A stretch of 63,164 nt of DNA, the filler included, from Octopus bimaculoides (taxonomy: Eukaryota), in the NCBI RefSeq assembly GCF_001194135.2. It is 7 parts of 6 records of this genome, joined end to end, with 100 filler letters (N's around TTAATTAATTAA, not from the genome) between each part and the next. Parts side by side here need not be neighbours in the genome. Positions count along the whole stretch, not along the records: positions 1 to 18,971 come from NC_069005.1; 6 more parts are not named here. The stretch is one strand, 5' to 3'. The notes under the pieces were generated by a model that saw nothing but the letters and a program-made list of their open reading frames with translations, was not told the DNA's origin and did no database searches. A program made the position numbers and the translations under genes. Shown here one piece after another: positions 1 through 18,971 of this stretch (within the stretch, counting starts at the first letter, position 1; every line of letters begins with the position of its first letter).

Positions 1-54
1 AAGTAACCTGAAAGCTGTGTTGAGTGCAGTTGAGGACCTGAAACTGGCTCACAG
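1..54 (+). CDS. CTR9: CTR9 exon (5' part outside window), ...SNLKAVLSAVEDLKLAHR
   Basis: Matches the CTR9 C-terminal TPR-region motif SNLKEVLNAVKELELAHR as I recall it from the vertebrate protein; donor ag|gtaaac at 55, phase 2. Confidence 0.93.
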
Positions 55-128
55 GTAAACTCTTTACACAATAGCTCATCCTTATTGCCTGTGTCCAGAT
101 AAAGATGGTTGTGTATATCTGATCAGTT

Positions 129-164
<36 letters not shown>

Positions 165-847
165 CTCCTTTTTGGTGAAATATTGCAACCTGTTATTGTT
201 GTCATTTAACCCCCAAATCAACCTTGATCAAACAGGCCTTTTGATCAAAGATGTTTCATTAACAACCAATCCTTCTATTTTTTTTATTTTTTATCTAGAA
301 CTACATTCTGTGAATCCAGGGGTTTTCAACCATCTTTTACCTATGGATCCCTTTGATAGCTATTTTATTCTGGTGCCCCCTCCCCCCTATAGCTATTCAG
401 TGTTTAAAAACTATGCAATAGTTTTTTTATACAATAGACATACAATAGGAATACAAAATACAAAATGGCTGATAGTTAGCACGGTGAGACACACATAAGA
501 AAGAAGAAAGCAAAGGACCACTGATGAGGTCACAGAAGTGTGACGAAAGAACTCTGGCTGAAATAGGATTAATGTAATGTAATGTAATATAAAGCTGGAG
601 CAAATTAACACCAAATATACAGTGCGTGTGTTTTTATTGGCTAAACTGGCAATATCACCATCCCCAAGTACAACAACGTTTAAAAACTAGTTTTCTAGAA
701 ACTTCTTTCAAGATTCCTATTTTGTTTTTCACTTGTGTAAGTTATGTAAAATGTGAGAGCAAGAAACCTAATTGTTTTTCTTGCAATACATACAAATACA
801 TACATCTAAAGCAACATTTTTTCAAGGGTTCTTAAAATACTATTGTA

Positions 848-1050
848 GCTTTCCATGCTAGCATGGGTTGGACAATTTGACTGAGGACTGGTGAAACCAG
901 ATGGCTGCACCAGGCTCCAATCTCATTTGGCAGAGTTTCTACAGCTGGATGCCCTTCCTAACGCCAACCACTCAGAGAGTGTAGTGGGTGCTTTTACATG
1001 CCCCCGGCACGAAGGCCAGTCAGGCGGTACTGGCAACGACCTCGCTTCGA
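848..1050 (-). mobile_element. RTE-LINE 3' UTR copy (5'-truncated)
   Basis: ttccatgctagcatgggttggac...ctacagctggatgcccttcctaacgccaacc core, shared with the copy at 19370 that carries the RTE ORF end. Confidence 0.8.
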
Positions 1051-1294
1051 ATGTCCAACCAACGTAAATCTCTATCAGTGAGGATTTCTATTATACATGG
1101 CAGTCCATAAAGATCAAGTAGACAAATTACATGCTTAGCTGTATTTTGTTCATCCTTTCAGGGTTGATAACCTAAGTACCAGAGTGGTCAGTGTAATCAA
1201 CCAGTCCCTTTCCTCAACATTGCTGGCCTTGTGACAAAATTTGAAACCAGTATTTTACTGACTTGATGTTACCGTTGTTGTTTTTTTATTCCAG

Positions 1295-1366
1295 ATACTT
1301 CATGTATCTCGGTCAACATGGAGACCGTATGAAGTTTGACCTGGCACAAGCTGCCATAGAAGCAGG
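1295..1366 (+). CDS. CTR9: CTR9 exon (R)YFMYLGQHGDRMKFDLAQAAIEA(G)
   Basis: Acceptor tttttttattccag, donor gtaagg; similar to CTR9 [24 protein letters not shown]; phase 2 to phase 2. Confidence 0.93.
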
Positions 1367-1933
1367 GTAAGGCTTCCTATATTTGTCCTGTTTTTTTTTT
1401 TGTATTTTCTAGTGTCAGGGACACTCTGGCCTGGAAGATGCAACTCTAATTTTAACTTGAAAAATTTTGCCAAAAAGACAAACATAAAAACAAACTTTAC
1501 CAATATCTACTGTTGGTAATTTACCAACTTAGCAGCATTTCTTCTGCCCTTTCATTTTAAGTTCAAATTCCACCAAAATCACATAACCTTTCATCCTTTC
1601 AGGACTGATAAAATAAGTAGCAATCAAGTACTGGGGTCAGTGTAATGAACTAGACCCTCCCACAAAATTTCATACATTGTGCTTATATAGTAAAAAGGCT
1701 TTTATAACACTGTTGTAACTGTATGCTTTTTTAAAGAACTGATTCATGCTCTGTGAAAAAGATTTCAAGCTGAAATTGTAATGTCACTATAAAGTTATGA
1801 AGTTACAACTTCACAGTTTCGTTCGCTGCATTCAAACAAGGGTTGCTTATGTAGAAAATCTATTTTATATAATAGAGAGGTTTTGTGTGATAGCATTTTA
1901 ATAAAGTTTGCTGTTCTGGTTCTTGTTTTATAG

Positions 1934-2069
1934 GCAATGTCATGATTTGCTGAGCCAAGCCCAATACCATGTGGCCAGAGCACGACAGATCGATGAACAG
2001 GAGAAGGAAGTTAGGAAACAACAGGAGCAAGCCAGAGAAGCCCATCACCAGAAACAGCAACAGATCATT
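1934..2069 (+). CDS. CTR9: CTR9 exon [45 protein letters not shown]
   Basis: Near-identical to the CTR9 motif [17 protein letters not shown]; acceptor ttttatag, donor gtaagt. Confidence 0.95.
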
Positions 2070-2382
2070 GTAAGTTTTTCACATCTTGCATTTGTTATTA
2101 TTACCTCTGCCTTAGGAAAGGCAGAGGAATTGTTTTCAGTTGCATTTGTTTGTTTGCCCATGGACAAGATATCTTGAGAACCACTGGATGAATTCAGATG
2201 AAACTTTGAGGGATGTTTGGCCTCATGACTGGCATAAACTGATTAGATTTTGGGATCGATCCGGTACTGGACAAGGATTCTGGATTATTTTTCCTGTTTT
2301 TTTTAATATTTTTTTTTACTCATACTCTGGCTCCATATCTCTGTCAATAACTAATTCTCTCTCTGTCCTATTTTTTTTCAAG

Positions 2383-2511
2383 ATGGAAAGGCAGAAAGAG
2401 AAAGAAGAAAAGGAGAGACGTCTAGCAGAACAGCGTGCTGTTATTGTACAGAAGGCCAAGAAACTGGCTCAAGAGGTTGAAGCAGCCGAGGAGGAGAAAC
2501 CCAAACGCAAG
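2383..2511 (+). CDS. CTR9: CTR9 exon MERQKEKEEKERRLAEQRAVIVQKAKKLAQEVEAAEEEKPKRK (coiled coil)
   Basis: Acceptor ttttttttcaag, donor gtaaga; 129 nt, phase 0/0; matches the CTR9 charged 'LEQRAQYVEKTK' region. Confidence 0.9.
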
Positions 2512-2519
2512 GTAAGAAG

Positions 2520-2680
2520 TTTGCTTCCCAACCACACATGGTTTCGGGCTCAGTCCCACTACATGGCACCTTGGGTAAGTGTCTTCTACAATAGCCCCAG
2601 GTCGGTCAAAGCCTGAGGTGGAGGAAGAGAACTTGGTAGGTGGAAACTGAAAGAAGCCTGTTTTGTACATGTGTGCGTTA
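2520..2680 (+). mobile_element. SINE fragment (major tRNA-derived family of this window)
   Basis: gggctcagtcccact...ggcaccttgggtaagtgtcttctacaatagcc...ggaaactgaaagaagcc core repeated throughout the window. Confidence 0.7.
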
Positions 2681-2799
2681 CAGTTTCCTTGTCTTTGCAT
2701 CAAATGGTAGTTGTAAAATGATTGTTATTGTCATACAACCAGTGTTGTTCATTCCCAGTTTTCAGCAAAGACATTTCTGAGCATGGGAAACATTACCTT

Positions 2800-2905
2800 A
2801 CAAGTGAATGTTGGCAACAGGATGGGCATCTGACTGTAGAAAGTTTGCCTCGATAAACTCTGTCCAACCCATGCAAGCATGGAAAATGGTCATTAAAATT
2901 ATGAA
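2800..2905 (+). mobile_element. Degenerate RTE 3' UTR copy, opposite orientation to the other copies
   Basis: gtccaacccatgcaagcatggaaaa and gggcatctgactgtagaaa are the reverse complement of the RTE tail consensus. Confidence 0.65.
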
Positions 2906-3864
2906 AATCATATATATATATATATGTGGGTGGGTGGGTGTAAGAATGGGTTTCAGGGTTGAAAATGCACTGGCTTTTAAAACAAAATGCTTAAAATGCT
3001 TTTTTTTTTTTTTNNNNNNNNNNNNNNNNNNNNNNNNNNNNNNNNNNNNNNNNNNNNNNNNNNNNNNNNNNNNNTGTTTTACAAATTTATTAAAATCTCA
3101 TACCAGTTTCAACAATTTTTGTTTTTCAGTGGTAAATATATAAAAAAGTAAAAGTTTATGAGAAAATGAATGTACAGGACAAAATTTCATAGCAATAAAA
3201 TAAGCTAAAAAAAGAAAAAACCCAAATATTCAACGAAGTTCATGGTAATAGGAAATGATAAAAGTTGAAATGTTCGGATTTCATAATAATACTTGATTGA
3301 GAAGGGTTTGATAGGTTTCAAAGTAATAAGTTATATTAGCAATTAGGATAGGATGAAGTTTTAAAATAAGTAAAACAATTTTTACCAGTTCTGTCACAGT
3401 TTAGGAAGGAGAATTGTTCATCTCTTGCTCTGCTGCTGCTGGAAGCCATTTGTGTGTTCGAGATAAGTCTGCCAGATTACTAACCATAGGATCATAAGTT
3501 CAATCCTTATTACACACATTGTATTATATTACTGAGCAAGGCATTTTGCATTTCTTCATCCAAATTTCCATGTCTGAACAAAAGCCCATGATTTCTTACT
3601 AGTGTGAGAGCCTTTATGCATTGTTCAATCTGTTAGAAATAGTAGTTAAATTTCCCTCGAATTACACTATCATCATTAAAAAAAAACAGATATTTTAAAT
3701 AAGAAATAAGGTAGTCCTACATGCTGAAAAAGCAGGCTAGGATGGTTACAGATGCTTTCCAACATAGGTCTGCATGAAGCAAAACAACAGCAGCCATGTT
3801 TCACTGCCGTTTGATAGCCCAATGGACAATTGTCGGAATTACAAATTTCACTTGCCCTGCATCA

Positions 3865-4049
3865 TTAACCCATTAGTGTTTAAACTGGCCAGATGTGGCC
3901 TCTCGCACCAACCCTATAATATCATTCTAAAAATTAACAGTTGCCTCATCAAAATCTCAGAGCTATAAGATAATGTATAATTAATTCAAAAGAGTGTGAA
4001 TAAATAAGCAGAACATTTGACAGAATAATCTGAAGGCTAAAGGGTTTAA
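3865..4049. mobile_element. TTAA-bounded MITE (piggyBac-like ends)
   Basis: ttaacccattag...ctaaagggtttaa inverted ends; similar to 30628-30855. Confidence 0.65.
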
Positions 4050-4054
4050 GTTGA

Positions 4055-4340
4055 CCAAATTAAGGGCCAGCTATGAGTATCTCCCCTTATTCTCAAACCG
4101 GACCAAATTAATTCTCACAAAACAAAATTAAGGCCAGTATTGGGTCTGTCACCCAAACTTCACACCCAGTTAAATTAGGGCTAGCTCTGGGTCTCTGCCC
4201 CGATTCTCATACCCAGTTAAATTAGGGCTAGCTGTGGGTCTCTGCCCCAATTCTCACACCTAACTAAATTAAGACCAGTTGTAGGTCTCTGCCCCAATTC
4301 TCACACCCAGTTAAATTAGGGCTAGCTGTGGGTCCCTGCT
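4055..4340. repeat. 47-bp minisatellite, about 6 units
   Basis: cccagttaaattagggctagct(g/c)tgggtctctgcccc(a/g)attctcaca repeated in tandem. Confidence 0.9.
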
Positions 4341-4424
4341 CAGTCTTCATATGCCGTTTAATAGGAGGAGGAATCTTTTTTAAAAAATGTTTTTCTTTTT
4401 TTTTCTTTTTTTTTTTTTTCACAG

Positions 4425-4570
4425 AAAAAGAAATATGACGATGAGATCGTGACAGATGGTTCCGGTGATGAAATGCCACGTAAGAAGAAGAGACGTAAGG
4501 GTGGCGGCAGTGGATCAGAAGAGATGGGATCTGATGGCGAAATGAAGAAGAAGGTGAAACGAAAGAGAAG
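4425..4570 (+). CDS. CTR9: CTR9 exon KKKYDDEIVTDGSGDEMPRKKKRRKGGGSGSEEMGSDGEMKKKVKRKR(R), basic NLS-like
   Basis: Long poly-T tract then cacag acceptor, donor gttggt; matches CTR9 KKKKRRKGSGSE; phase 0 to phase 2. Confidence 0.88.
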
Positions 4571-5289
4571 GTTGGTGATTATGATGATGATGATGATGAT
4601 GTTGTTGAATAAGTTACATTGGATGTTATCTGTGATGCTAGTGATGCGGTGATGATAGGCATGAGTGAAAGATGGTGAGAATCAGATATAGATAATGGGG
4701 AGGGAGTAAGACTAACGACAGTGATGGACAAAGGTGTTTATCTGTTGCTGATGATGATGAGGGTGGGGTTTTGGTGACAACAGTGTATAACATTTTTTTT
4801 TTTTTGTGTGTATGTGTGTCGGTAAGTGTTTTTTCTGTTCCCTTCAAACTTTGCTTTTCTGACCTGGATATTAATGTTTTGAAACAGACTTATTTTCCAT
4901 TACATTTCAAACAGATTCAGCACAGAGTTGCTGAAGCAGAAATATCGTTATGGCAAATATTCTGCTCAATACCACAGATTTACTTGTCAGTTGCTTGACC
5001 TGAAACCAGTTGAGCATGTCCCTTAGTGGCTGACGATATGTGCATCTCTGATCATGAGCAGAAGTAGTGGGGGAGCATCATAGCCATGTGTTGAGAGGGA
5101 TTCTTTGGGATTTGAATAAATGTAAGAAAAGCAAAGTTTGAAGGAAATATTAACCATTTCTCATATTTTCTAGCAGTAAGCAAATAGGAAATAACAGTTG
5201 CTACCTAAGGATAATAATTGTATTACACAGTGTGACCAAAGCTGGCAAAAGTTATGATACGAATAATCTTTTCTACTCTAAACACAAAG

Positions 5290-5605
5290 CCCAAAATGTT
5301 TGTGGGGAGGTGGTCAGTCAATTAGATCGACCCCAGTATGCAACTGGTGCGTAATTTATCAACCCTGAAAGGATGAAAGGCCAACCAAAACCTCCTGAGT
5401 GGATGATTGAAACTGAAAAAAGCCTGTCATATATGTGTGTGTGTCTGGTTGTCCCCCCCCCCATCACTGCTTGATAACCAGTGTTGGTGTGTTTACGTCC
5501 CTGTAACTTAGCAGTTTGACAAAAGAGACCAACAGAATAAGTGCTAGACTCAAGGAAAAAATCCTGGGCTTGATTTGTTCAACTGAAACAAGTAAAAGAA
5601 TAAAA
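5290..5605 (+). mobile_element. Composite SINE fragments
   Basis: gaccccagtatgcaactggt...gaaaggatgaaagg, then gtggat...gaaactgaaa...gtccccccc catcactgcttgataacc...gaataagt...gaaacaagtaaaaga. Confidence 0.7.
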
Positions 5606-5736
5606 GAACATACATGCTAATACCTACTTTATGAAATGTGTAACCTCTGCCTCCACTGTGTGATGTGATGGAAATTGGTGGCGTCAGCTCTGTGAGTATT
5701 TCTTCCCTAAATTGTCTTAACTTTCTTTGATTTCAG

Positions 5737-5919
5737 GCCACCGAAAGAGCCGCGTCAGCGAAGACCCCGCCAACTGAAGGAGTCGAAAAGGAAACTCCGA
5801 TTGGAGGAGGATGATGGCTTGACAGCTAAACAGAGGCGTAAAGTTGTGTCGAAGGCACTCATTTCCTCAAGCGAAGGCAGTGATTCTGATGATGGAGAAA
5901 AACTACAGATTGACGAAAA
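5737..5919 (+). CDS. CTR9: CTR9 exon PPKEPRQRRPRQLKESKRKLRLEEDDGLTAKQRRKVVSKALISSSEGSDSDDGEKLQIDE(K)
   Basis: Acceptor tttcag, donor gttagt; SKALISSS..SD..KLQI matches CTR9 [20 protein letters not shown]; phase 2/2. Confidence 0.9.
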
Positions 5920-6194
5920 GTTAGTTGCTGTCTTCATTTATTATATATATATATACACTTGGTGTTTTTCTTTGATGTCTTAAAATTTATGTAGGAAGTT
6001 TTTAGCTTCTGTGTCTCTCATCTCTGTCTGTCCATGTGAACTAGATTAGCATTAATCAGGTTACCCAAGAAAAGTTAGTATCTATCTCCATTTATTATAC
6101 AGGGTGTCCACAAAGTCTAGGTACATGGAGTAAATGAAATCATAACATAAACAATTAAATATAAGAAGTAATAATCTCATATATGTTGTGTGTG

Positions 6195-6543
6195 TTGGCA
6201 CTCCGTCGCTTACGACGTTGAGGGTTCCAGTTGATCCGATCAACGGAACAGCCAGCTCGTGAAATTAACGTGCAAGTGGCTGAGCACTCCACAGACACGT
6301 GTACCCTTAACGTAGTTCTCGGGGATATTCAGCGTGACACAGTGTGACAAGGCTGGCCCCTTTGAATTACAGGCACAATAGAAACAGGAAGTAAGAGTGA
6401 GAGAAAGTTGTGGAGGAAGAGTACAGCAGGGTTCGCCACCATCCCCTGCCGGAGCCTCATGGAGCTTTAGGTGTTTTCGCTCAATAAACACTCACAACGC
6501 CCGGCCTGGGAATTGTGACCACGAGTCCGCTGCCCTAACCACT
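6195..6543 (-). mobile_element. tRNA-headed SINE, little diverged
   Basis: The minus strand starts agtggttagggcagcggactcgtggtc (A-box-like); CpGs are retained; the gtgacaaggctggccc motif recurs degenerate near 31925. Confidence 0.7.
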
Positions 6544-7249
6544 NNNNNNNNNNNNNNNNNNNNNNNNNNNNNNNNNNNNNNNNNNNNNNNNNNNNNNNNN
6601 NNNNNNNNNNNNNNNNNNNNNNNNNNNNNNNNNNNNNNNNNNNNNNNNNNNNNNNNNNNNNNNNNNNNNNNNNNNNNNNNNNNNNNNNNNNNNNNNNNNN
6701 NNNNNNNNNNNNNNNNNNNNNNNNNNNNNNNNNNNNNNNNNNNNNNNNNNNNNNNNNNNNNNNNNNNNNNNNNNNNNNNNNNNNNNNNNNNNNNNNNNNN
6801 NNNNNNNNNNNNNNNNNNNNNNNNNNNNNNNNNNNNNNNNNNNNNNNNNNNNNNNNNNNNNNNNNNNNNNNNNNNNNNNNNNNNNNNNNNNNNNNNNNNN
6901 NNNNNNNNNNNNNNNNNNNNNNNNNNNNNNNNNNNNNNNNNNNNNNNNNNNNNNNNNNNNNNNNNNNNNNNNNNNNNNNNNNNNNNNNNNNNNNNNNNNN
7001 NNNNNNNNNNNNNNNNNNNNNNNNNNNNNNNNNNNNNNNNNNNNNNNNNNNNNNNNNNNNNNNNNNNNNNNNNNNNNNNNNNNNNNNNNNNNNNNNNNNN
7101 NNNNNNNNNNNNNNNNNNNNNNNNNNNNNNNNNNNNNNNNNNNNNNNNNNNNNNNNNNNNNNNNNNNNNNNNNNNNNNNNNNNNNNNNNNNNNNNNNNNN
7201 NNNNNNNNNNNNNNNNNNTTGAAATGTGTGCACATGTACACACACATCA

Positions 7250-7460
7250 ATTGCTTCCCAACTACGTGGTTCCAATTTCAGACCCACTGCGTTGCCCACC
7301 TCGGGCAAGTGTCTTCTATAGCCTCAGGCCAACCAAAAACCGCGTGAGTGGATTTGGTAGACGGAAACTGAAAGAAGCCCGTCGTATATGTGTTTGTGTG
7401 TCTGGTTGTCTCCCCCCCCCCATCACTGCTTGATAACCAGTGTTGGTGCACTTGTCTCTT
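7250..7460 (+). mobile_element. SINE (major family)
   Basis: gggcaagtgtcttctatagcc...gagtggatttggtagacggaaactgaaagaagcccgtcg. Confidence 0.75.
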
Positions 7461-8411
7461 TTTGCTCGCCATTGTCAGCCTATCAAGACAATCCAAGGTG
7501 ATTTGTAGCATGGATGCAAGGCATTTGTACCGATTCTTGAAAGGAAGAAAGAAGAGCATATTAGATAGTGTTGTAGATGGTTTGGTCGTGATGGGGTTGT
7601 CTTAGAGTCAGGAGCGTCCGAGTGCAGATCATCCTGAGGATGTAGGGATACAAAGTAAGAAGTTTGCTTTACAACTACGGGTTTCCAGTTGAATCTCACT
7701 TTACGGCACCTTGAGCAAGTGTCTTCTACTCAAGCTTTGTGTGTTGCATGGAATTTGATAGATGGAAACCGTGTGGAAGCCTCTTGAATGGTAGACTTAA
7801 TTCGTCACCTACTTAAAACTACTGCTTGACTCTTGGGTGCCTTAATAGAGTCTCTTGCAAAGACTCGAGCCAAGTCAGAGTTCTGAGGATCATTTTCTCC
7901 CATTTGTCTCAGAATCTCGGTGCTGACCAAGTTATGTACAAAAAGAAATATAGAACTACGTTACCCTTCCTGCCTGCCTTCAAGACAGGAGAATTTGATT
8001 CGATGGAGATTTAGCTACAACTCATTTTTTTTTTACCATATTTATGTTGAAATACACTGCTTTTATTTTAATTAATTTTGAAAATAATGAAGAATTTAGT
8101 AATATAACGATGTCGTTATGAAGTTGGTGTTTAGAACATAAATTAGCACGGAATTTTGACGGAAGATTTTTAATTAATTAAAACGGGAAGTTTCTATTAT
8201 AGAACCAGGGGCAGTCTAGTATCAGAAGGGTTAAGGACTCCCTTATTAGCTCATATGATGAAGAGTTGTGATTTTTGTGTAGTTCCTGGTCAGTTGCTTA
8301 CACAGGGCAGCCCCGGTTAATCAGCTGAATAACAAGGTGCAACCCCCACAACCATCTTTCTAGATATTTTGTCTCCACTTCACTGAGAATCATAGTGCAT
8401 ACTCCAACATA

Positions 8412-8585
8412 CATCATTGTCATCATTTAATGTTCACTTACCATGCTGGCATGGGTTGAACTGTTTGACCATAGCTAGTAAGGCCAAGGGCCGCACCAGA
8501 CTCCATTGTCTCTTCTGGCATGGTTTCTATGCCTGGATACACTTTACAGTGTATATTGGGTGCTTTTTATGTTCCACCAGCATCA
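8412..8585 (-). mobile_element. Degenerate RTE 3' UTR copy
   Basis: catcatttaatgttcacttaccatgctggcatgggttg motif. Confidence 0.6.
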
Positions 8586-8829
8586 GTGCTTTTAAATCAT
8601 TAATGCATAGCTCCAGAAAAATGGACACAGGAAAAATTACTATTGCTTGTTAAGTAAACTACCTATTGAGCTTATATTTGGTATAGTCTGCCTCTAAACT
8701 AGTGCTCTGTGAGTGAGCAGGCGCTGCATACAAACAAACCAACTATACACACGTATGAAACAAGTAATAGCAATTTTTCCTACATCCATTTTTCTGGACA
8801 CTATGCATTAATGAGTTAACGTGGTACCA

Positions 8830-9345
8830 GCCACATAGCTTCTTCTTCTTGCCTTTCACCCTCCAACGCGGAGTATAGGCCACTTATAATTGAATTCCAT
8901 GTCGCATAATTTCTCGCTTCTGTACTTATACTCTGCCATGAATGTCCCCCTTTCTCTAGTTCCTTTTGTGTTGATCTACGCCACGAGTTCTTAGGCCTAC
9001 CCCTCTTTCTATATCCATCCGGATTCCACTGTAAAGCACTTTTCGCTGCATTTGGTGTGTCCTTTCTAATTGTGCTACCAATCCACTTCCATTTTTTCTT
9101 AAATATCTGCTCTCTAATCGGAACTTGATTTGTTCTTTGCCATAACTCCATATTGCTTACGTGTTCGGGCCATCTGATTTTAAGTATACTACGCAAGCAC
9201 CTGTTGATGAATGATTGTATTTGCTTATTTGACTTAACTGTTGTTCGCCATGTCTCAGCCCCATACAATAACACCGCCTTTACGTTAGTGTTAAAAATTC
9301 TTATTTTGTTCTTTATTGAAATTACACTTGCGCTCCATCCTTTTT
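8830..9345 (-). mobile_element. 5'-truncated RTE-clade LINE (C-terminal part of RT ORF), antisense in a CTR9 intron
   Basis: Open frame KIRIFNTNVKAVLLYGAETW...RCLRSILKIRWPEHVSNMELWQRT...WKWIG...ALQWNPDGYRKRGRPKNSWRRS, typical of RTE C-termini; short (GAA)n tail. Confidence 0.9.
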
Positions 9346-9419
9346 TTCACACCCACAGAGCAGTAATGAATTATTTGTACAGAGATGCAGTGTGACTGGA
9401 CAGCTTCTCTCTATTTCCT

Positions 9420-9670
9420 GGTCTGTTTCTTATTTCGTTATTGCCCACAAGGGGCTACACATAGAGGGGACAAACAAGGACAGACAATAGGATTAAGTCG
9501 ATTATATTGACCCCAGTGCATAACTGGTACTTAACTTAATTTATTGACCCCAAAAGGATGAAAGACAAAGTCGACCGCAGTGGAATTTGAACTCAGAACG
9601 TAACGGCAGACGAAATACCGCTAAGCATTTCGCCTGACATGCTAACGTTTCTGCCAGCTCACCGCCTTAA
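9420..9670 (-). mobile_element. tRNA-derived SINE (second family)
   Basis: The minus strand starts ggcggtgagctggcagaaacgttagcatg; gttctgagttcaaattcc B-box-like; related copies near 39.5, 44.9, 59.4 and 60.6 kb. Confidence 0.7.
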
Positions 9671-9807
9671 CTTCCTGGTCTGTTTCTGTATTCCTGCAAA
9701 TACTGCAGAGGTGTTGATGTGTGGTGTGGTGTGCCTGAATTACTAATGAATTGTTTCAGTATTTAGCTTGTGTCGTATCTGATGGTCATCTTGTTCCTTT
9801 CTTTCAG

Positions 9808-10504
9808 GGGAGACGACAGCAGCACCGAGGGCCGGTCGAAGCAGCGTNNNNNNNNNNNNNNNNNNNNNNNNNNNNNNNNNNNNNNNNNNNNNNNNNNNNN
9901 NNNNNNNNNNNNNNNNNNNNNNNNNNNNNNNNNNNNNNNNNNNNNNNNNNNNNNNNNNNNNNNNNNNNNNNNNNNNNNNNNNNNNNNNNNNNNNNNNNNN
10001 NNNNNNNNNNNNNNNNNNNNNNNNNNNNNNNNNNNNNNNNNNNNNNNNNNNNNNNNNNNNNNNNNNNNNNNNNNNNNNNNNNNNNNNNNNNNNNNNNNNN
10101 NNNNNNNNNNNNNNNNNNNNNNNNNNNNNNNNNNNNNNNNNNNNNNNNNNNNNNNNNNNNNNNNNNNNNNNNNNNNNNNNNNNNNNNNNNNNNNNNNNNN
10201 NNNNNNNNNNNNNNNNNNNNNNNNNNNNNNNNNNGGGCGTGGACGTGTCCGGCGCCAGAAGCAGAAGAGGAAGAGGAATAGCAGCAGTAGCAGTGGCAGT
10301 GGTGACGGTGGCGACAGGTCATCTGGTGCTGAAAGTGGCGGCGGCGGCGGCGGAGGCGGCAGCGGCAGTGGCAGCGAGGGCGGCGGCGGCGGTGGTAGCC
10401 CTGTAGCTACATCTCGTGCAGGAGGAGACAGTGGAAGTGCCAGTCCATCAGGTGGTGCTGCCAACAGCAAGGCAAGCAACTCTGATGATGACGACTCAGA
10501 TTGA
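9808..10504 (+). CDS. CTR9: CTR9 terminal exon(s), Ser/Gly/Arg low-complexity tail ending SDDDDSD*; interrupted by N gap 9848-10234
   Basis: Acceptor ccttttctttcag-type tract, phase 2 fits the previous donor; terminus resembles CTR9 ...GSDDSD*; TGA at 10502-10504. Gap content is unknown and may hide an intron. Confidence 0.8.
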
Positions 10505-11524
10505 GTTGTGTCCCTTGTTATCCTCTCCTTCCTCTCTTTCCTCCTCTCTCTTTCTTTCACCTCAGACTGAGAAATTCGCATCATTTATCTTACATCCGCT
10601 GTTTTAATCACAGCTCTGTAAATCTGCCTTCTCCTCCCTTCCACCCTAAAGAACTATATAAACTGTATACTGTGAGGACCTCAGACCTCCACTTTCCATA
10701 TTACTTCTCATTCACAAACGCACACACATCTATGTAGATGCATACATTGATGTATATATATATATATGGGAGAATGTACGAAAAAAAACACAACAGACGA
10801 GGACAGGTGGTGTAAACAACAAAAGGATGTATTAGTATGACGCTCGGGAATACGGAAAGTCTTTAACGTTTCGAGCTACGCTCTTCAACAGAAAGAATAC
10901 GGAGAAAACAAGGAGAAAAACACGGAGAAAAAAAATTGAATGGTGTTTGGTCAACGATCTATCATATATATATATATACATACATACACACTCACACGTT
11001 TAACATAGATGCATAATATCAAAGTGCATTCACCAACAAGTGCACATACACACACACACACATACATACATACATTCATATATATATATGTGTGTGTGTG
11101 TTTGATTCTGGTAATTCCGTCTCATTGTTATTCAGTTTCACACACAATGCAATCTTTCAGGTGACAAGAAAACATACTCCACGAACATGTATTGAGTACT
11201 TTATCTGTTGTTTGTAAAACAAAGTGTGCGTGTGTGTGTAGAGAGAGAGAGAGAGAGAACAGTCATGGGCCACATGCAACAAGCAGGACTTTGATTGTCA
11301 CACCTAAAAATAAAAAATTGTCTCAAATTTATTTGTTTTGTGGTTTATCTGATGTTGAGTCGTGTCTCCAGCGGCCCACTGATTTTCCCCACCATGCCTG
11401 GTTTACAGAATTACTTGTGAAGTTAAGATGACTCGTTAATGACTACATCAAGACAACTATCATATGTCTGTCTATCACTGCAGATAACTAACTCAGTTGA
11501 TTAGCTACAACAGGTACATCTCTC

Positions 11525-11543
11525 CCATATATATGTATGTATG

Positions 11544-11574
<31 letters not shown>

Positions 11575-12070
11575 TTGTATTTATGTATGTATGTGTATAC
11601 ATATGTATGTATGTGTACATATATGTATAAATATATGTATGTATGAATATATGTATGTATACATGTGTATGTAAGTATGTATGTATATATATATCTATCT
11701 ATATATATGTGTGTGTGTGTATATATATATGTGTATATATATGTATGTATGAATATGTGTATGTATGTATATATATGTTTGTGTATGTATGTATATATAT
11801 GTTTATATATGTATGTATATATATGTTTATGTATGTATATGTATATGTATGTATATATATATGCATATGTATATATATGTATGTATATATATATATATGT
11901 ATGTATGTATATCTATATGTATATATGTATGTATGTGTATATATATGTATATATATGTATGTGTATGTATGTATATATATATATATTATATATGTATGTA
12001 TGCATATATTATTTATATATGTATGTATGCATATATTATTTATATATGTATGTATATTATATATATATGT
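11525..12070. repeat. Compound (TA)/(ATGT)/(TG) microsatellite
   Basis: Seen directly; the YV/YI-rich ORFs here are artefacts. Confidence 0.95.
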
Positions 12071-12084
12071 ATCTCTTTTATTTG

Positions 12085-12165
12085 TTTCAGTCATTTGACT
12101 TTGGCCATGCTGGAGCACCACCTTTATTTGAGCAAATCGACCCCAGGACTTATTCTTTGTAAGCC
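12085..12165 (-). mobile_element. SINE 3' end (major family)
   Basis: ttttatttgtttcagtcatttgactttggccatgctggagcacc...tcgaccccaggacttattctttgtaagcc. Confidence 0.7.
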
Positions 12166-12265
12166 NNNNNNNNNNNNNNNNNNNNNNNNNNNNNNNNNNN
12201 NNNNNNNNNNNNNNNNNNNNNNNNNNNNNNNNNNNNNNNNNNNNNNNNNNNNNNNNNNNNNNNNN

Positions 12266-15200
12266 TTACGTACGGACGTATGTACGCTCGTTCCTTCGTT
12301 CGTTTGTTTTTTCTTTCGTTCATACGCACGTACGTTCGTTCGTTCGTTCCTACGTACATACGTACTTTCGTTCGTTCGTATGTATATATACCTACATTTG
12401 TTCGTTAAATCGTTTGTTCTATCTTTCGATCCTTCTTTCGTACTTTGATTCTTTCGTTTATTCGTTCGTACGTATGTTATTTCATTCGTTCGTTCGTTCA
12501 TTCGTGCGTACGTACATAAGTAAGTAAGTACGTACGTTCGTTCGTTCGTTCGTTCNNNNNNNNNNNNNNNNNNNNNNNNNNNNNNNNNNNNNNNNNNNNN
12601 NNNNNNNNNNNNNNNNNNNNNNNNNNNNNNNNNNNNNNNNNNNNNNNNNNNNNNNNNNNNNNNNNNNNNNNNNNNNNNNNNNNNNNNNNNNNNNNNNNNN
12701 NNNNNNNNNNNNNNNNNNNNNNNNNNNNNNNNNNNNNNNNNNNNNNNNNNNNNNNNNNNNNNNNNNNNNNNNNNNNNNNNNNNNNNNNNNNNNNNNNNNN
12801 NNNNNNNNNNNNNNNNNNNNNNNNNNNNNNNNNNNNNNNNNNNNNNNNNNNNNNNNGTACGAACTTTCGTTCGTTTGTTCGTTCGTTCATTAGTTAGTTC
12901 GGTCGTTCCTTCGTTCGTACCTACGTATGTACGTACTTATGTATGTACGTCCGTACGTCCGTTCGTTCCTTTGTTTGTTCGTACTTACGTACGTTCGCTC
13001 GTCCATCCGTTCGTTCGTACGTACGTACGTATGTACGTTCGTTCGTTCGTTCGTTCGTACGTACGTACTTTTGTATGTACGTACGTACGTTCGTTCGTTC
13101 CTTTGTTTGTTCGCTCGTCCATCCGTTCGTTCGTTCGTACGTACGTAATTACGTTCGTTCGTTCGATCGTTCGTTTGTTGGATCGTTTGTTCGTACTTAC
13201 GTACTACGTACGTACGTTCCTTCGTTCGTTCCTACTTACGTACATACGTAGGTACGTACGTAAGTACGAACGAACGAACTAACGAACGAAAGTTCGCAAA
13301 TACGTACGTAGTAACGAACGAATGAAGGAACGAACGAACGAACGAACGTACGTATGTGTGAATCAACGAACGAACGAAGGAAGAAAGAATTAACGAACGA
13401 ATGAATGAACGAAAGAAGGAATGAACGATAGAACAAACGATTTAACGAACAATCGTAGGTACATACGTACGAATGAATGAACAACCGTACGTACGAAGGA
13501 AGAAACGAACGAATGAACGTACATACGTAGGTATGTACGAACGAACAAAAGATCGAACAAAACAACGAACGAACGTACGTACGTACGTAGTACGTACATT
13601 AGAATGAACGAACAAACGAACGAACGAACAAACGATCGAACGAACAAACGAACGAACGAAAAAACGAACGAACAAACGAACGACCGAACGAACAAACGAA
13701 CGAACGTACGCACTTGCGAACGAAAGTAAGATCGAACAAACAAACAAACGAAGGTACGATCGAACGAACTAACGTACGTACATACATCCGTTCGTAGGAA
13801 CGACCGAACGAGCGAACGAATGTACGTACGTACGAACGAATGAACTAGCCCATGTACGTACGTACGTACGAACGACTAAACGAACGAAATTAAGGAACAA
13901 ACGGACGTACATTGTACGAATAAACTAACGTACGTATGTATGAACGTTCGAACGAAAGAACGAACGTACGTACGAACAAACGACTGAGCAAATGAACGAA
14001 CGAACAACGAACGAACGAACATACGGAATAACGAACGAACGTACGTACGGATGTACGTTCGCAAGTACCTACGTACGAAAGAATGAAAGAACGTACGTAA
14101 AAACGAACGACGAACGAACGAACGTACGTTCGTACGTAAGTACAAACGAACTAACGTTCGAACAAACAAAAGACAGAAAGAATGATGGAAAGAACGAACG
14201 TAAGTATGTACGTAGGTACGATCGAACGAACGAACGAAAAAACGAACTAACGAATGAACGTACGTACTTACGAATGAACGACCGTAATTACGTACGTACG
14301 AACGAACGGATGGACGAGCGAACGTACGTACGTACGAACAAACAAAGGAACGAACGGACGTACGGACGTACATACATAAGTACGTACGTACGTACGTACC
14401 AACGAAGGAACGAACGAACTATCTAATGAACGAACGAACAAACGAACGAAAGTTCGTACATACGTACGTAGTAACGAACGAACGAATGAACGAACGAACG
14501 TACGTACGTATGAATCAACGAAAGAACAAATGAAGAACGTACTTACGCACGTACGAACGAACGAACGAATGAATGAATGAACGAATGAACGAAAGAAGGA
14601 ACGAACGATAGAACAAACGATCTAACGAGCAGTCGTAGGTACATACGTAAGAACGAACGAACAACCATACATACGAAGGAACAAACGAAGGAATGAACAT
14701 ATGTACGTACGTAGGAACGAACGAACGATTGATCGAACGAACGCACAAACGAACAAACGAAAGAAGGAACGAACGATGGAACGAAGGAACAAAAGAACGA
14801 TCGAAAGTACGTAGGTACGTACGATCAAACGAACGAACGAACGAACGAAAGAACTAACGAACGACCGAACGAAAGAACGTACGTGTATACGTACGAAGAA
14901 ACGAAACAACGAACAAACGAAGGTACGTTTATACGTACGTTCATACGTAAGAATGAAGGAATGAACAAATGTAAGTACGTACGACTGAACGAACGTACGT
15001 ACGACCGAACGAACGTACGTACGTAAGAACTAACATGCGTACGTATGTACGAACGAACGACCAAACGATCGAAGGAACGAACGAAAGAACGAACGATCGT
15101 ACGTACATACGAACGAACGAATGTACGTACGTACGTACTAATGACCGAACGAACGAAAGAACGAACGTACGTACGAACAAACGACTGAGCAAATGAACGA

Positions 15201-18200
15201 ACGAACAACGAACGAACGAACATACGGAATAACGAACGAACGTACGTACGGATGTACGTTCGCAAGTACCTACGTACGAAAGAATGAAAGAACGTACGTA
15301 AAAACGAACGACGAACGAACGAACGTACGTTCGTACGTAAGTACAAACGAACTAACGATCGAACAAACAAAAGACAGAAAGAATGAAGGAACGAACGAAC
15401 GTAAGTATGTACGTAGGTACGAACGAAAGAACGAATGAACAATCGAAGAAACGAATGTACGTACGAAAGAACGAACGATCGAAAGATCGAACGTACGTAT
15501 GAGGGAACGGAATCATATACATACGTCCGTACGTACGAAAGAACGAACGAACGTACGTACGTATGTACGAACGAACGATAGTACGTATGTACGTATGAAG
15601 GAACGAATGAACGAAGAAACGAAATGAATGAACGAGCGAAAGTGCGAATGTACGAACGTACGAAGGAACTAACGATTGAATGTACATACGCACGTACGTA
15701 CGTACGAACGAACGAATGAAAGAACATACGTACGTAATTACGTACGTACGAACGAACGAACGAACGGATGGATGAGCGAACGTACGTACGTACGAAAAAA
15801 CAAAGGAACGAACGAACGTACGTACGTACGAACGAGCGTACGAACGAACGTACATACATACGTACGTACGAACGAACGAACGAAAGAACTAATGAACGAA
15901 CGAACTAACGAACGAAAGTTCGCAAATACGTACGTAGTAACGAACGAACGAACGTACGTATGTATGAATCAACGAACGAACGAACGAAGACAGAATTAAC
16001 GAACGAATGAATGAACGAAGGAAGGAACGAACGACAGAACAAACGATTTAACGAACATTCGTAGGTACATACGTACGAATGAATGAACAACCGTACGTAC
16101 GAAGGAAGAAACGAACGAATGAACGTACGGATGTACGTACGTAGGAACGAACGAACGATTGATCGAACGAACGAACAAACGAAAGTAGGAACGAACGATG
16201 GAACGAACGAAGGAACAAAAGAACGAACGAAGGAACAAAAGAACGAACGAAAGTACGTAGGTACGTACGAACAAACGAACGAACGATCAAACGAACGAAT
16301 GAACGAAAGAAAGAACGTACGTACGTAATTACGTTCCTTCGTTCCTACTTTTGGACGTACGTATGTTCTTTCTTTTGTTCGTTCGTTCGATCGTTCGTTC
16401 ACTCGATCTTTTGTTCGTTTGTTCGATCGTTCGTTCGTTCGCTCGTACGTACCTTCGTTCGTTCGTTCGTTCGTTCGTACGTAGCTACGTACGTACTTTC
16501 GTTCGTCCTGTTGTTCCTTCGAACGTACGTCAGTACTAACAAACGAACGTAATTACGTTCGTACGTACGAACGAATGAATGAACGAACGATCGAACGAAC
16601 GAACGAATGAAAGAACGTATGTACGTACGATAGAATGAACGAAAGAATCATAGAACGAAAGAATCATAGAACGAAAGAAGGACCGAACGATAGAACAAAC
16701 GATTTAACGAACAAATGTAGGTACATACGTACGAACGAATGAAAGTTTGAACGAACGAAAGTACGTATGTAAGTACGAACGAAAGATCGAACGAACGTAC
16801 GTTCGTACGAACGAAAGAAAGAACAAACGAACGAAAGATCGGAATGAAGAAAGGACGAACGTACATACGTACGTTTATACGTACGAACGAAAGAACTTAT
16901 GTTCGAACGAACAGACGAACGAAAGAACGATCGAACGAAAGAATTAACGAACAAACGTTCGTACGAACGAACGGAAGAACGTACATACGTTTGTAAGAAT
17001 GAACGAACGAACGACCGAACGATCGAAAGAACGAACGAATGAACGAAGCAACGAACAAAAGGTGGTACGTCTGTACGTACGTTAATACGAAAGAAGGAAC
17101 GAACGTAGGAACGTAAGTACCTACGAACGATAGAACGTACGTACGTACGTACATAAGTACGTACGAGTGAACGAACGATCGTAGGTAAGTACTACCTAAG
17201 TAAGTATGCACGAATGAACAAACGAACGTACGTACCTACGAACGAACGAACGAACGAACTAACGAAAAAATGAACCAACAAATTAACAAACAAACGTACG
17301 TACGTACGATCGAGCGAACGAAGGAACGTGCGTACATACGTCCGTACGCACAAGCGAACAAAAGAACGAATGTCCGAACGTACGTACGTACGAACGAACA
17401 AAAGAACGAACGAATAAAAGAATGAACGAACGTACGTACGTACGTAGTACGTACATTAGAATGAACAAACAAAGAAACGACCGAACGTACGCACTTGCGA
17501 ACGAAAGAAAGATCGAACGAAGAAACAAGTGAACATACGTACGAACGAACGAACGTACGTACATACATCCGTACGTAGGTACGATAGAACGAGCGAACGA
17601 ATGTACGTACGTACGAACGAATGAACGAACAAACGTACATAGTACGAATAAACGAACGTACTTATGTACGAACGTTCGAACGAAGGAATGTACGTACGTA
17701 CAATCGATCGAACGAACGAACGAAAAAACGAACTAACGAATGAACGTATGTACTTACGAATGAACGAACGAATGAACGAATGTACGTAAGTAGGAACGAA
17801 CGAAGGTAGGTAGGTACGTAGTACGAATAAACGAACGTACGTATGTACGAATGTTTGAACGAACCAATGTACGTACGTACAATCGAACGAACGAACGAAC
17901 GACCGAACGATCGAAGGAACGAACGAAACAACGAACGTACGTACGTCCGCACAAACGATCGTATGTACGTACGTACATACGAACTAACGAACGAACGTAC
18001 GTACTTACGTACGAACGTACATACATACGTACGTACGTACTTATGTACGTACGTTCGTACTTACGTAAGAACGTACAAAAGAACGTACATAAGAAGGAAC
18101 GAACTAGCGAAAGCACGAACGAACGAAAGAACTAACGAACGACCGAAAGAAAGAAAGTACGTGTGGAAGTACGAAGAAACGAACGAACGAAAAAACGAAA

Positions 18201-18971
18201 CAACGAACAAACGAAGGTACGTTTGTACGTACGTTCATACGTAAGAATGAAGGAATGAACGAACGTACGTAGGTAAGTACGGACGAACGAAAGTTCGTAC
18301 GCACGTAAGTACGTAAGTACGAACAAACGAACGAACGAACAAACGTAATTACGTACGTACAAACGAACGAACGAACGAAAGAACGAACGGATAGACGAGC
18401 GAACGTATGAACGTACGTACGAACAAACGGACGAAAGAACTAATGAACGAACGAACTAACGAACGAAAGTTCGCAAATACGTACGTAGTAACGAACAAAC
18501 GAACGAACGAACGAACGTACGTACGTATGCATGAATCAACGAACGAAGGAACGAAGAAAGAAATAACGAACGAATGAATGAACGAAAGAAGGAATGAACG
18601 ATAGAACAAACGATTTAACGAACAATCGTAGGTACATACGTACGAATGAATGAACAACCGTACGTACGAAGGAAGAAACGAACGAATGAATGTACGTACG
18701 TAGGTATGCACGAACGAACGTACGTACGTACGTATTACGTACATTAGAATTAACGAACGAACGAACAAACGAACGAACGAACAAACAAACCAACAAAAGA
18801 AGGAACGAACAAACGAACGAACGTACGCACTTGCGAACGAAAGAAAGATCGAACAAACAAACAAACGAAGGTACGATCGAACGAACTAACGTACGTACAT
18901 ACATCCGTTCGTAGGAACAAACGAACGAGCGAACGAACGAACGTACGCACTTGCGAACGAAAGAAAGATCG
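12266..18971. repeat. CpG-dense tetramer satellite (ACGA/ACGT mosaic) with inversions and higher-order blocks
   Basis: Continuous 4-nt-register array: TTCG polarity 12266-~13250, CGAA to ~16328, TTCG ~16329-16520, CGAA to the gap at 18972. Confidence 0.97.

What the first reader, a model, noticed from the sequence alone, without database searches (positions are those of the whole stretch)
12266..18971. 6.7-kb CpG-saturated tetramer satellite just downstream of CTR9
Seen: nearly every 4-mer is ACGA or ACGT, so about one CpG per 4 nt in an otherwise AT-rich window. The variant units (ATGA, ACAA, ATGT, ACAT) are what CpG deamination would produce, yet CG units still dominate. Palindromic TACGTA, CGTACG and CGTAATTACG sites are dense. 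Known: methylated CpG decays, and ACGT is the core bound by bZIP factors. Inference: slippage or conversion keeps regenerating CpG. The array could act as a methylation sink, an unmethylated-CpG platform, a factor sponge, or a boundary ending CTR9 transcription. I do not recognise it as a named satellite.
Basis: partly seen in the sequence, partly recalled or inferred. Interest (0 to 1): 0.75.

Follow-up and report, generated by a model that had tools for sequence, protein, structure and literature searches.

The report
Degenerate CpG-rich tetranucleotide repeat array
This is a real stretch of at least 6.4 kb built from decayed AACG and TACG four-base units and enlarged by copying bigger blocks; it is most likely an ordinary, germline-unmethylated simple-repeat satellite, and only a scaffold join places it next to CTR9.

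Summary
The array is real. Period 4 holds from 12266 to the end of the piece. There are 939 CpGs in 6,405 read bases, with CpG observed/expected 3.28 against 0.47 in the flank, and 98% of CpG-to-CpG distances are multiples of 4.

Only 51% of in-phase units are exactly AACG or TACG. There is one CpG per 6.8 nt, not per 4. Transversion variants (AAAG, AAGG) are as common as deamination variants. CGTAATTACG occurs six times.

Perfect runs never exceed five units. 69% of the array has an internal paralogue of at least 85% identity, some of them inverted. Growth was therefore mainly by duplication of 0.1-2.6 kb blocks, with some whole-unit indels.

CpG transitions between young copies are only about 2-3 times more frequent per site than other transitions. 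The simplest reason CpG persists is lack of germline methylation, not regeneration.

A 100-N gap separates the array from the CTR9 contig, so the linkage is unproven. An orthologous CTR9 locus shows no such array in the 2.7 kb available after its stop codon. The 301-N gap cannot be resolved. No reads were available. The proposed functions remain untested. Ordinary kind, modest interest.

The parts
12166..12265 (.). 100-N scaffold gap between the CTR9-bearing contig (which ends in a SINE-like fragment) and the array contig
   Evidence: The adjacency of the array to CTR9 rests on this join alone.
12266..12555 (-). Array segment in CGTT/CGTA orientation (reverse complement of AACG/TACG), more decayed than the rest
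   Evidence: TRF period 4 at 12288-12555, 69% matches; CpG o/e 3.52; orientation map
12556..12856 (.). 301-N assembly gap inside the array; continuity undetermined
   Evidence: same repeat type and orientation on both sides, no colinear paralogue, no overlap, nominal phase shift of 1
12857..13255 (-). Array segment in CGTT/CGTA orientation; 12857-13027 is a 96.5% inverted copy of 14289-14459
13256..16328 (+). Main array segment in AACG/TACG orientation
   Evidence: TRF 13266-18965, period 4, 1426 copies; orientation map
16329..16527 (-). Short inverted (CGTT-oriented) segment; its left junction is at the palindrome AACGTAATTACGTT
   Evidence: inverted repeat I1 with arms 16052-16305 / 16316-16569, 70% complementary; single-strand fold of 16230-16420 gives dG -58.1 against -32.8 kcal/mol for shuffles, z -8.2
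16528..18971 (+). Array segment in AACG/TACG orientation, cut by the end of the piece, so its true end is unknown
13268..13546 (+). Copy 1 of a higher-order block. Other copies: 14428-14727 (88-92%), 15860-16129 (96% over 190 nt) and 18445-18719 (94.6%)
   Evidence: Landmark motif positions 13288/14448/15914/18465 and 13455/14635/16061/16717/18628.
13949..14264 (+). Youngest direct duplicate pair, 96.5% identical to 15150-15465 (offset 1201)
10235..10504 (+). Context: last CTR9 coding exon after a gap (Ser/Gly/Asp-rich tail), stop codon at 10502-10504
   Evidence: The orthologous tail in L123 ends ...SDEDSD*.

Best explanation
This is a neutral, microsatellite-derived satellite. An old compound tetranucleotide repeat of AACG units and self-complementary ACGT (TACG) units decayed to about 51% canonical units. 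It then grew mainly by unequal exchange or segmental duplication of blocks of about 0.1 to 2.6 kb, with smaller gains and losses of whole units. Some blocks were copied in inverted orientation. This is plausibly because (ACGT)n tracts are their own reverse complement and can promote hairpins and template switching; that last step is inferred. CpG stays dense because this DNA is not methylated in the germ line, as is usual for intergenic and repeat DNA in invertebrates with mosaic gene-body methylation. CpG therefore decays at close to the ordinary substitution rate and needs no special regeneration. The array has no demonstrated role in CTR9 expression, and its position next to CTR9 is a scaffolding statement only.
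For: SHOWN.
- Strict period 4 with decayed units.
- Perfect runs of at most 5 units.
- Internal paralogues of at least 85/90/95% identity cover 69/44/24% of the array, against a background of about 70-72% between unrelated in-phase stretches.
- Loose higher-order spacing of 1.16-1.47 kb and 2.55-2.6 kb.
- Inverted copies.
- Indels between copies of 4, 20 and 28 nt, i.e. whole units.
- A weak 32-36 nt sub-period.
- Strong in-silico hairpin potential at an orientation switch (z -8.2) and between ACGT tracts (z -6.9).
- Mutation spectrum: transitions equal transversions at the CpG positions, 344:344. Among young copies, CpG transitions are 0.048 per site against 0.018 for non-CpG transitions, and transversions are 0.035 against 0.032. 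Polarised changes: 5 destroy a CpG, 0 create one, 8 are other.
- The flank (CTR9 gene body) has CpG o/e 0.27-0.57, so the genome does methylate some DNA.

FROM THE LITERATURE. [quoted passage not shown] They are concentrated in gene bodies, and intergenic DNA and transposons are largely unmethylated (PMC9476566).

FROM OTHER SEQUENCES. Short arrays of the same unit types exist elsewhere. L001 has about 310 bp of a TACGTTCG repeat and L002 has (TACG)n. At least 120 metagenome contigs carry 7 or more perfect WACG units.
Against: - No methylation data and no reads could be examined. 'Unmethylated' is therefore inferred from substitution patterns based on small counts: 32 CpG transitions and 13 polarised changes.
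- The paralogous blocks overlap and are not independent samples.
- The same octopus paper reports relatively higher methylation on 'satellite' repeats than on other repeats.
- The species of the window is not established. Octopus is my recollection of the SINE-like fragment at 12073-12165, not a test.
- CpG transitions are still about 2-3 times elevated, which would allow partial methylation.
- The strand-asymmetric excess of AAAG/AAGG over AACT/AACC (88+46 against 24+about 5) is not explained by point mutation alone. It suggests that variant units are amplified or that a purine-rich strand is favoured.
Confidence: 0.6

Rival explanations
1. The array is methylated and losing CpG by deamination, but replication slippage or gene conversion between units regenerates AACG/ACGT units fast enough to keep CpG dominant.
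For: Whole-unit indels (4, 20, 28 nt) distinguish paralogous blocks, and run lengths of AACG differ between copies. A<->T differences are the commonest non-CpG difference between young copies at 27 of 73; I did not check whether they fall at unit position 1, where they would interconvert AACG and TACG. CpG transitions are about 2.8 times enriched per site. Satellites are the repeat class with somewhat higher methylation in octopus (PMC9476566).
Against: Perfect runs are at most 5 units, and there is only one perfect 8-unit run in 6.4 kb, which is a poor substrate for slippage. Transitions and transversions at CpG positions are equal, not the roughly ten-fold or greater transition excess expected (from general knowledge, not tested here) for methylated CpG. 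None of 13 polarised changes creates a CpG. Most similarity within the array comes from block duplication.
Confidence: 0.12
2. The array is a functional element: an unmethylated-CpG platform, a binding-site sponge, or a boundary/terminator that acts on CTR9.
For: CpG density is very high, at o/e 3.28 over more than 6 kb. There are 291 ACGT cores. Hairpin/cruciform potential is strong, and there are 68 alternating purine-pyrimidine runs of at least 12 nt.
Against: Adjacency to CTR9 rests on a 100-N join. The array starts at least 1.76 kb after the stop codon, and an AATAAA lies at about 11309. The orthologous CTR9 locus L123 has no AACGAACG or TACGTACG anywhere in the 20 kb held, which include 2.67 kb after its stop. 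Canonical animal bZIP sites are absent. G+C of 42% fails the usual CpG-island criterion. The sequence is evolving like decaying repeat DNA. There are no Rfam matches.
Confidence: 0.06
3. The sequence type is real, but this representation is partly an assembly product. It may be collapsed, mis-ordered or mis-oriented within the array, and/or the array contig may be wrongly placed beside CTR9.
For: Two gaps lie at or within the array (100 N and 301 N) and four more in 12 kb of flank, so this is a gap-rich draft. Internal copies at 94-96.5% identity, some inverted, are classic causes of mis-joins. No paralogue bridges the 301-N gap. The last 40 nt of the piece repeat 18812-18852 exactly. The flank contig ends in a dispersed repeat.
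Against: The contiguous 6.1 kb from 12857 to 18971 has enough unit-level variation to give unique k-mers. The higher-order copies differ by ordinary substitutions and whole-unit indels, not by abrupt chimeric breaks. Nothing tested here shows an error.
Confidence: 0.25

Closest known systems
Compound/imperfect tetranucleotide microsatellites, (AACG)n and (ACGT)n, as labelled 'Simple_repeat' by standard repeat maskers
   Same: Four-base unit, head-to-tail, strict phase; the same two motifs. Short examples were found in unrelated public contigs: L001 with about 310 bp and L002, and at least 120 metagenome contigs with 7 or more perfect units.
   Different: About ten times longer than any AACG/TACG-type example I retrieved. 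That comparison set is short-read metagenome contigs and is not a fair ceiling. The array is much more decayed (51% canonical units, runs of at most 5), has block-level duplicates and strand inversions, and sits in a genome whose flank is CpG-depleted.
Simple-unit satellites with higher-order structure, for example human HSat2/HSat3 built on degenerate (CATTC)n (my own knowledge, not tested here)
   Same: A very short unit that has diverged. The array is then amplified as larger blocks with a loose higher-order periodicity and occasional inversions.
   Different: Those satellites are megabase-scale, pericentromeric and methylated. Here only at least 6.4 kb is seen. Genome-wide copy number, chromosomal position and methylation are unknown. 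The unit contains CpG and is half palindromic.
(AATG)n/(AACG)n mixed arrays that turn up as spurious 'SFIHSFVRSF' proteins in many eukaryotic assemblies
   Same: Same parent unit and stop-free reading frames. Hits P0010-P0018 to the array's 344-aa ORF are translations of such arrays.
   Different: In those arrays the deaminated AATG (IHSF) unit dominates. That is what a methylated AACG array would be expected to become. In this window AACG outnumbers AATG 499 to 78.
CpG islands / non-promoter CpG-rich tandem repeats
   Same: CpG observed/expected far above 0.6 over more than 200 bp, next to CpG-depleted DNA.
   Different: G+C is 42%, below the 50% criterion. There is no promoter or gene association. 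The CpG excess is a by-product of the repeat unit, not of base composition.

Membership tests
Tetranucleotide microsatellite (simple sequence repeat) | Tandem head-to-tail repetition of a 1-6 bp unit | tested here: met
   TRF period 4, 1426 copies; 98% of CpG spacings are multiples of 4
Tetranucleotide microsatellite (simple sequence repeat) | Largely uninterrupted runs that change length by replication slippage | tested here: not met
   Longest perfect runs are 5 units (AACG) and about 4.5 units (ACGT); one perfect 8-unit mixed run. Only 51% of units are canonical. Whole-unit indels do occur between copies.
Satellite DNA with higher-order repeats | Kilobase-scale or longer tandem array | tested here: met
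   At least 6.4 kb of read bases, cut by the end of the piece
Satellite DNA with higher-order repeats | Blocks of several units more alike to each other than neighbouring units are | tested here: met
   Blocks of 83-316 nt at 88-96.5% identity against a 70-72% background; landmark spacing of 1.16-1.47 and 2.55-2.6 kb, but irregular
Satellite DNA with higher-order repeats | Many copies or loci in the genome, typically heterochromatic or (peri)centromeric | not testable with these tools
   No genome or reads of the species were available. Searches of the protein database with array ORFs found no near-identical copies.
CpG island | Length over 200 bp, CpG o/e above 0.6, G+C at least 50% | tested here: not met
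   o/e 3.28 and length are met, but G+C is 0.42
CpG island | Unmethylated in the germ line | tested here: inconclusive
   Indirect only: CpG transitions are about 2.8 times non-CpG transitions, and ts:tv is 1:1 at CpG positions. No bisulfite or nanopore data.
bZIP binding-site cluster | Canonical palindromic sites (CRE TGACGTCA, PAR/E4BP4 TTACGTAA, G-box CACGTG) | tested here: not met
   0, 1 and 0 occurrences. ACGT cores sit in GTACGTAC / TACGTA contexts.
3' boundary / terminator element of CTR9 | Physically contiguous with the CTR9 3' end and conserved there | tested here: inconclusive
   A 100-N gap intervenes. The orthologue L123 lacks any such array in the 2.67 kb held after its stop, but its species and distance are unknown and the flank held is short.

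The most novel reading that the evidence does not exclude
The array belongs to a lineage-specific family of germline-unmethylated, CpG-saturated, hairpin- and Z-prone tetramer satellites. These would act as non-promoter CpG platforms (recruiting CXXC-type or Polycomb/Trithorax factors) or as structure-driven boundaries or fragile sites. The palindromic ACGT tracts would drive their own inversion and spread.
Probability: 0.06. Interest if true: 0.6.

Novelty: new member of a known kind. Interest (0 to 1): 0.25.

Why it matters
Mostly as a caution and a small natural experiment.

(1) It shows what an AACG/ACGT repeat looks like when CpG is not being eroded. In arrays from other public eukaryotic assemblies (source organisms not identified) the deaminated AATG unit dominates instead. 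Such arrays could therefore serve as internal reporters of germline methylation state in mosaic-methylated invertebrate genomes.

(2) The array has stop-free frames of up to 344 codons that gene callers turn into false proteins.

(3) Any claim linking it to CTR9 would be built on a scaffold gap.

If long reads showed it to be one locus of an abundant, positionally specific family, it would be of more interest for chromosome biology in this lineage.

Tried and rejected
Depth, long-read support, RNA and bisulfite signals could therefore not be examined.
- Rfam at gathering threshold over 1-18971: nothing. tRNA scan: none.
- Pfam on the 344-aa array ORF and on the intronic retroelement-like ORF: nothing. 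I treat the array ORFs as artefacts of stop-free units.
- Species identification. The CTR9 fragment search gave only unnamed fragments at up to 93% aa identity. A literature search for the SINE string found nothing. The species remains unproven.
- Literature search for a named AACG/ACGT satellite in cephalopods or molluscs: nothing specific.
- Bridging the 301-N gap by colinearity with a paralogous block: failed. The two flanks have different best paralogues.
- The idea that the neighbouring (TATG)n array at 11527-12072 is the deaminated remnant of (TACG)n. I rejected it as unsupported, because decay on both strands should also give TACA units, and that array has almost no C (1.6%).
- A perfect palindrome centred on the orientation switches. 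I found only background-level (70-72%) arm complementarity apart from short cores. The inverted segments are copies of distant blocks, not mirror images of their neighbours.
- Search for same-family arrays through translated ORFs. The plus-strand ORF gave 2 weak low-complexity hits.

Full report
WHAT IS THERE

From 12266 to the end of the piece (18971) the sequence is a four-base tandem array interrupted by one assembly gap. TRF reports 13266-18965 as period 4, 1426 copies, 69% matches, consensus ACGA. It also reports two shorter stretches (12288-12555 and 12866-13276) with TCGT/TTCG/CGTA units. The array holds 939 CpGs in 6,405 read bases. CpG observed/expected is 3.28, against 0.47 in bases 1-11500. 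98% of distances between successive CpGs are multiples of four, and the phase changes only 17 times in 5.7 kb. Dinucleotide-preserving shuffles never produce the array-type patterns I tested. The core observation is real and far beyond chance.

I cut the array into 1,534 in-phase units, after turning the inverted parts. AACG makes up 32.5% and TACG 18.8%, so about half of the units are canonical, not nearly all. CpG density is one per 6.8 nt.

The variant units are not just deamination products. At the C position C>T is 160, C>A 165 and C>G 92. At the G position G>A is 184, G>T 64 and G>C 23. Transitions and transversions at the CpG are therefore equal at 344 each. AAAG (88) and AAGG (46) are as prominent as AATG (78) and AACA (93).

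TACGTA (181) and CGTACG (177) are indeed dense. CGTAATTACG occurs only six times, several of them at matching positions in duplicated blocks. G+C is 42%, against about 38-40% in the flank, so the contrast is in CpG and not in base composition.

ARCHITECTURE

The array is not uniform.

- Orientation switches three times. 12266-13255 and 16329-16527 read CGTT/CGTA. 13256-16328 and 16528-18971 read AACG/TACG.
- Perfect runs are short: at most five AACG units and about 4.5 ACGT units. Only one perfect run of eight mixed units exists.
- There is a weak 32-36 nt sub-period (TRF period 32 at 12857-13249; a lag-identity bump at 32).
- The array is a mosaic of larger duplicated blocks. 13949-14264 matches 15150-15465 at 96.5%. 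13268-13546 matches 18445-18719 at 94.6%. 13333-13522 matches 15939-16128 at 96.3%. 12857-13027 is an inverted 96.5% copy of 14289-14459. Unrelated in-phase stretches agree at only about 70-72%.
- Internal paralogues of at least 85%, 90% and 95% identity cover 69%, 44% and 24% of the array.
- Landmark motifs recur at 13288/14448/15914/18465 and at 13455/14635/16061/16717/18628. This gives a loose higher-order spacing of about 1.2-1.5 kb and 2.55-2.6 kb.
- Aligned copies differ by substitutions and by indels of 4, 20 and 28 nt, that is, whole units.

THE GAPS

The operators asked that the 301-N gap (12556-12856) be tested first. Both sides are the same repeat in the same orientation. However, the right side's close paralogue (14289-14459, inverted) is not continued by the left side, whose best match lies at 16654-16835 (83.5%). 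The only colinear match is at background identity. There is no suffix/prefix overlap. With 301 taken literally, the CpG phase moves from 3 to 0 mod 4. Continuity, order and distance across this gap cannot be decided from the sequence.

A second gap matters more for the finding's title. 100 N at 12166-12265 separate the array from the contig that carries CTR9. That contig ends in a (TATG)n tract and a SINE-like fragment.

CTR9 itself is confirmed. Translated exons match human CTR9 residues 819-913 at E 6e-11. The Ser/Gly/Asp-rich tail ends at a stop codon at 10502-10504. 'Just downstream of CTR9' is therefore a scaffolding statement, not a read-through observation.

AN ORTHOLOGOUS LOCUS

A CTR9 fragment search returned a protein on a 241-kb ENA contig. 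Its locus, L123, carries four CTR9 exons in the same order, at about 79-81% nucleotide identity. One exon is 97.5% identical at protein level. The homologous acidic tail ends ...SDEDSD* at L123:17590-17592. The 2.67 kb after that stop, and the whole 20 kb held, contain no AACGAACG, CGTTCGTT or TACGTACG and no period-4 array. The species is unknown and the flank is short, so this is only modest evidence that the array is not a conserved companion of CTR9.

WHY CpG PERSISTS

The substitution data do not show strong methylation-driven decay.

- Among the young duplicated blocks, CpG transitions are 0.048 per site against 0.018 for non-CpG transitions. Transversions are 0.035 against 0.032.
- In the three close copies that can be polarised against a fourth, 5 changes destroy a CpG (4 of them transitions), none creates one, and 8 are elsewhere.
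- A two- to three-fold excess of C:G>T:A is what unmethylated DNA commonly shows. Methylated CpGs typically show ten-fold or more (established knowledge, not tested here).
- The counts are small and the blocks are not independent, so this is suggestive rather than decisive.

The flank, which is CTR9 gene body, has CpG o/e 0.27-0.57. That fits a genome with mosaic gene-body methylation. For Octopus bimaculoides, published bisulfite data show fewer than 10% of CpGs methylated. These are concentrated in gene bodies, with intergenic DNA and transposons largely unmethylated, although 'satellites' were somewhat higher than other repeats (PMC9476566). I think the window is from an octopus or another mollusc because I recognise the SINE-like fragment at 12073-12165, but that is memory and not a test.

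Arrays in other public eukaryotic assemblies that hit the translated array are dominated by the deaminated AATG unit ('IHSF' in translation). Here AACG outnumbers AATG 499 to 78.

MOST LIKELY MECHANISM

An old compound (AACG)n/(ACGT)n microsatellite decayed. It was then enlarged mainly by unequal exchange or segmental duplication of blocks of 0.1-2.6 kb, with minor whole-unit slippage. It stays CpG-rich simply because it is not methylated in the germ line.

The inversions are shown. Their cause is inferred. ACGT tracts are self-complementary. The +/- junction at 16230-16420 folds as single-stranded DNA at -58.1 kcal/mol against -32.8 for shuffles (z -8.2). ACGT tracts also pair with each other within one strand (z -6.9). 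68 alternating purine-pyrimidine runs of at least 12 nt occupy 17% of the array. Such DNA is prone to hairpins and template switching.

One feature is unexplained. AAAG/AAGG greatly outnumber their strand-mirror variants AACT/AACC, which suggests amplification of particular variants or a purine-strand bias.

FUNCTIONAL PROPOSALS

None could be tested directly.

- Against a bZIP sponge: TGACGTCA occurs 0 times, TTACGTAA once and CACGTG 0 times.
- Against a CTR9 terminator: the scaffold gap, a distance of at least 1.76 kb from the stop codon, an AATAAA at about 11309, and the orthologue without an array.
- Against a classical CpG island: G+C is 42%.
- No Rfam family, tRNA or Pfam domain is present.
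- The long ORFs on the array (up to 344 aa at 14825-15859, minus strand) exist only because AACG/TACG units contain no stop in those frames.

COMPARISON WITH KNOWN THINGS

Any repeat masker would label this (AACG)n/(ACGT)n simple repeat, so in that sense it is 'already in repeat libraries'. Short arrays of the same units are common. At least 120 metagenome contigs carry seven perfect units, but the AACG-type stretches there are about 0.5 kb or less. L001 and L002 are examples. In behaviour the array resembles simple-unit satellites with higher-order structure, such as human HSat2/3 (my knowledge). Copy number, chromosomal location and methylation, which define that class, could not be tested. 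I found no named satellite matching it. I file it as a new member of a known kind.

VERDICT

The array is real and unusually CpG-dense, and it is a structurally interesting mosaic. It is most probably a neutral, unmethylated, microsatellite-derived satellite. The link to CTR9 and the functional ideas are unsupported. Interest 0.25.

Noticed in passing
window 11527-12072: A 546-bp (TATG)n/(TA)n array with zero CpG and 1.6% C. TRF also reports a 68-bp higher-order period. It lies just before the SINE-like fragment and the 100-N gap. TATG is a one-strand deamination product of TACG, but the partner TACA is absent, so it is probably an independent microsatellite.
   Followed up: partly
window 12073-12165: A 93-bp unique-looking fragment (gtcatttgactttggccatgctggagcacc...) at the contig end. 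It resembles, from memory, a very abundant octopus SINE. No literature or database confirmation was obtained.
   Followed up: partly
window 18812-18852 and 18931-18971: The last 40 nt of the piece exactly repeat a stretch 119 nt upstream. This is either a recent tandem duplication or an assembler loop at a contig end.
   Followed up: no
window 14825-15859 (-) and other array ORFs: The array has stop-free reading frames of up to 344 codons (YVRSFVRS... and NERTNERT...). Public protein collections contain many such spurious 'proteins' translated from AACG/AATG arrays, for example P0010-P0018. One is even named an ABC transporter by its source.
   Followed up: yes
window 8816-9274 (-): A 152-aa ORF in a CTR9 intron (LLYGAETWRTT...RKRGRPKNSWRR) looks like the C-terminal part of a non-LTR retrotransposon ORF. 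It has no Pfam hit.
   Followed up: partly
window 4160-4339: A 47-bp minisatellite, 3.8 copies, 84% matches, inside a CTR9 intron.
   Followed up: no
window 10337-10392: A (GGC)n tract of 18.7 copies encodes a poly-Gly run in the CTR9 C-terminal tail. The tail is Ser/Gly/Asp-rich here and in the orthologue L123.
   Followed up: partly
window 3014-3074, 6544-7218, 9848-10234: Three further assembly gaps (61, 675 and 387 N) lie inside the CTR9 region, one of them inside or next to the last coding exon. The assembly is a gap-rich draft, so gene models here are incomplete.
   Followed up: no
L123 18800-18890: A tRNA-like SINE head (ggcccattggtttagtgggtagag...ggttcaatccc) lies 1.2 kb downstream of the orthologous CTR9 stop. 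L123 overall has CpG o/e 0.30.
   Followed up: no
L001 1180-1495 and 2380-2499: A G+C-rich eukaryotic metagenome contig carries about 310 bp of a (TACGTTCG)n-type array within a called ORF and ends in ccctaa telomere-like repeats.
   Followed up: no
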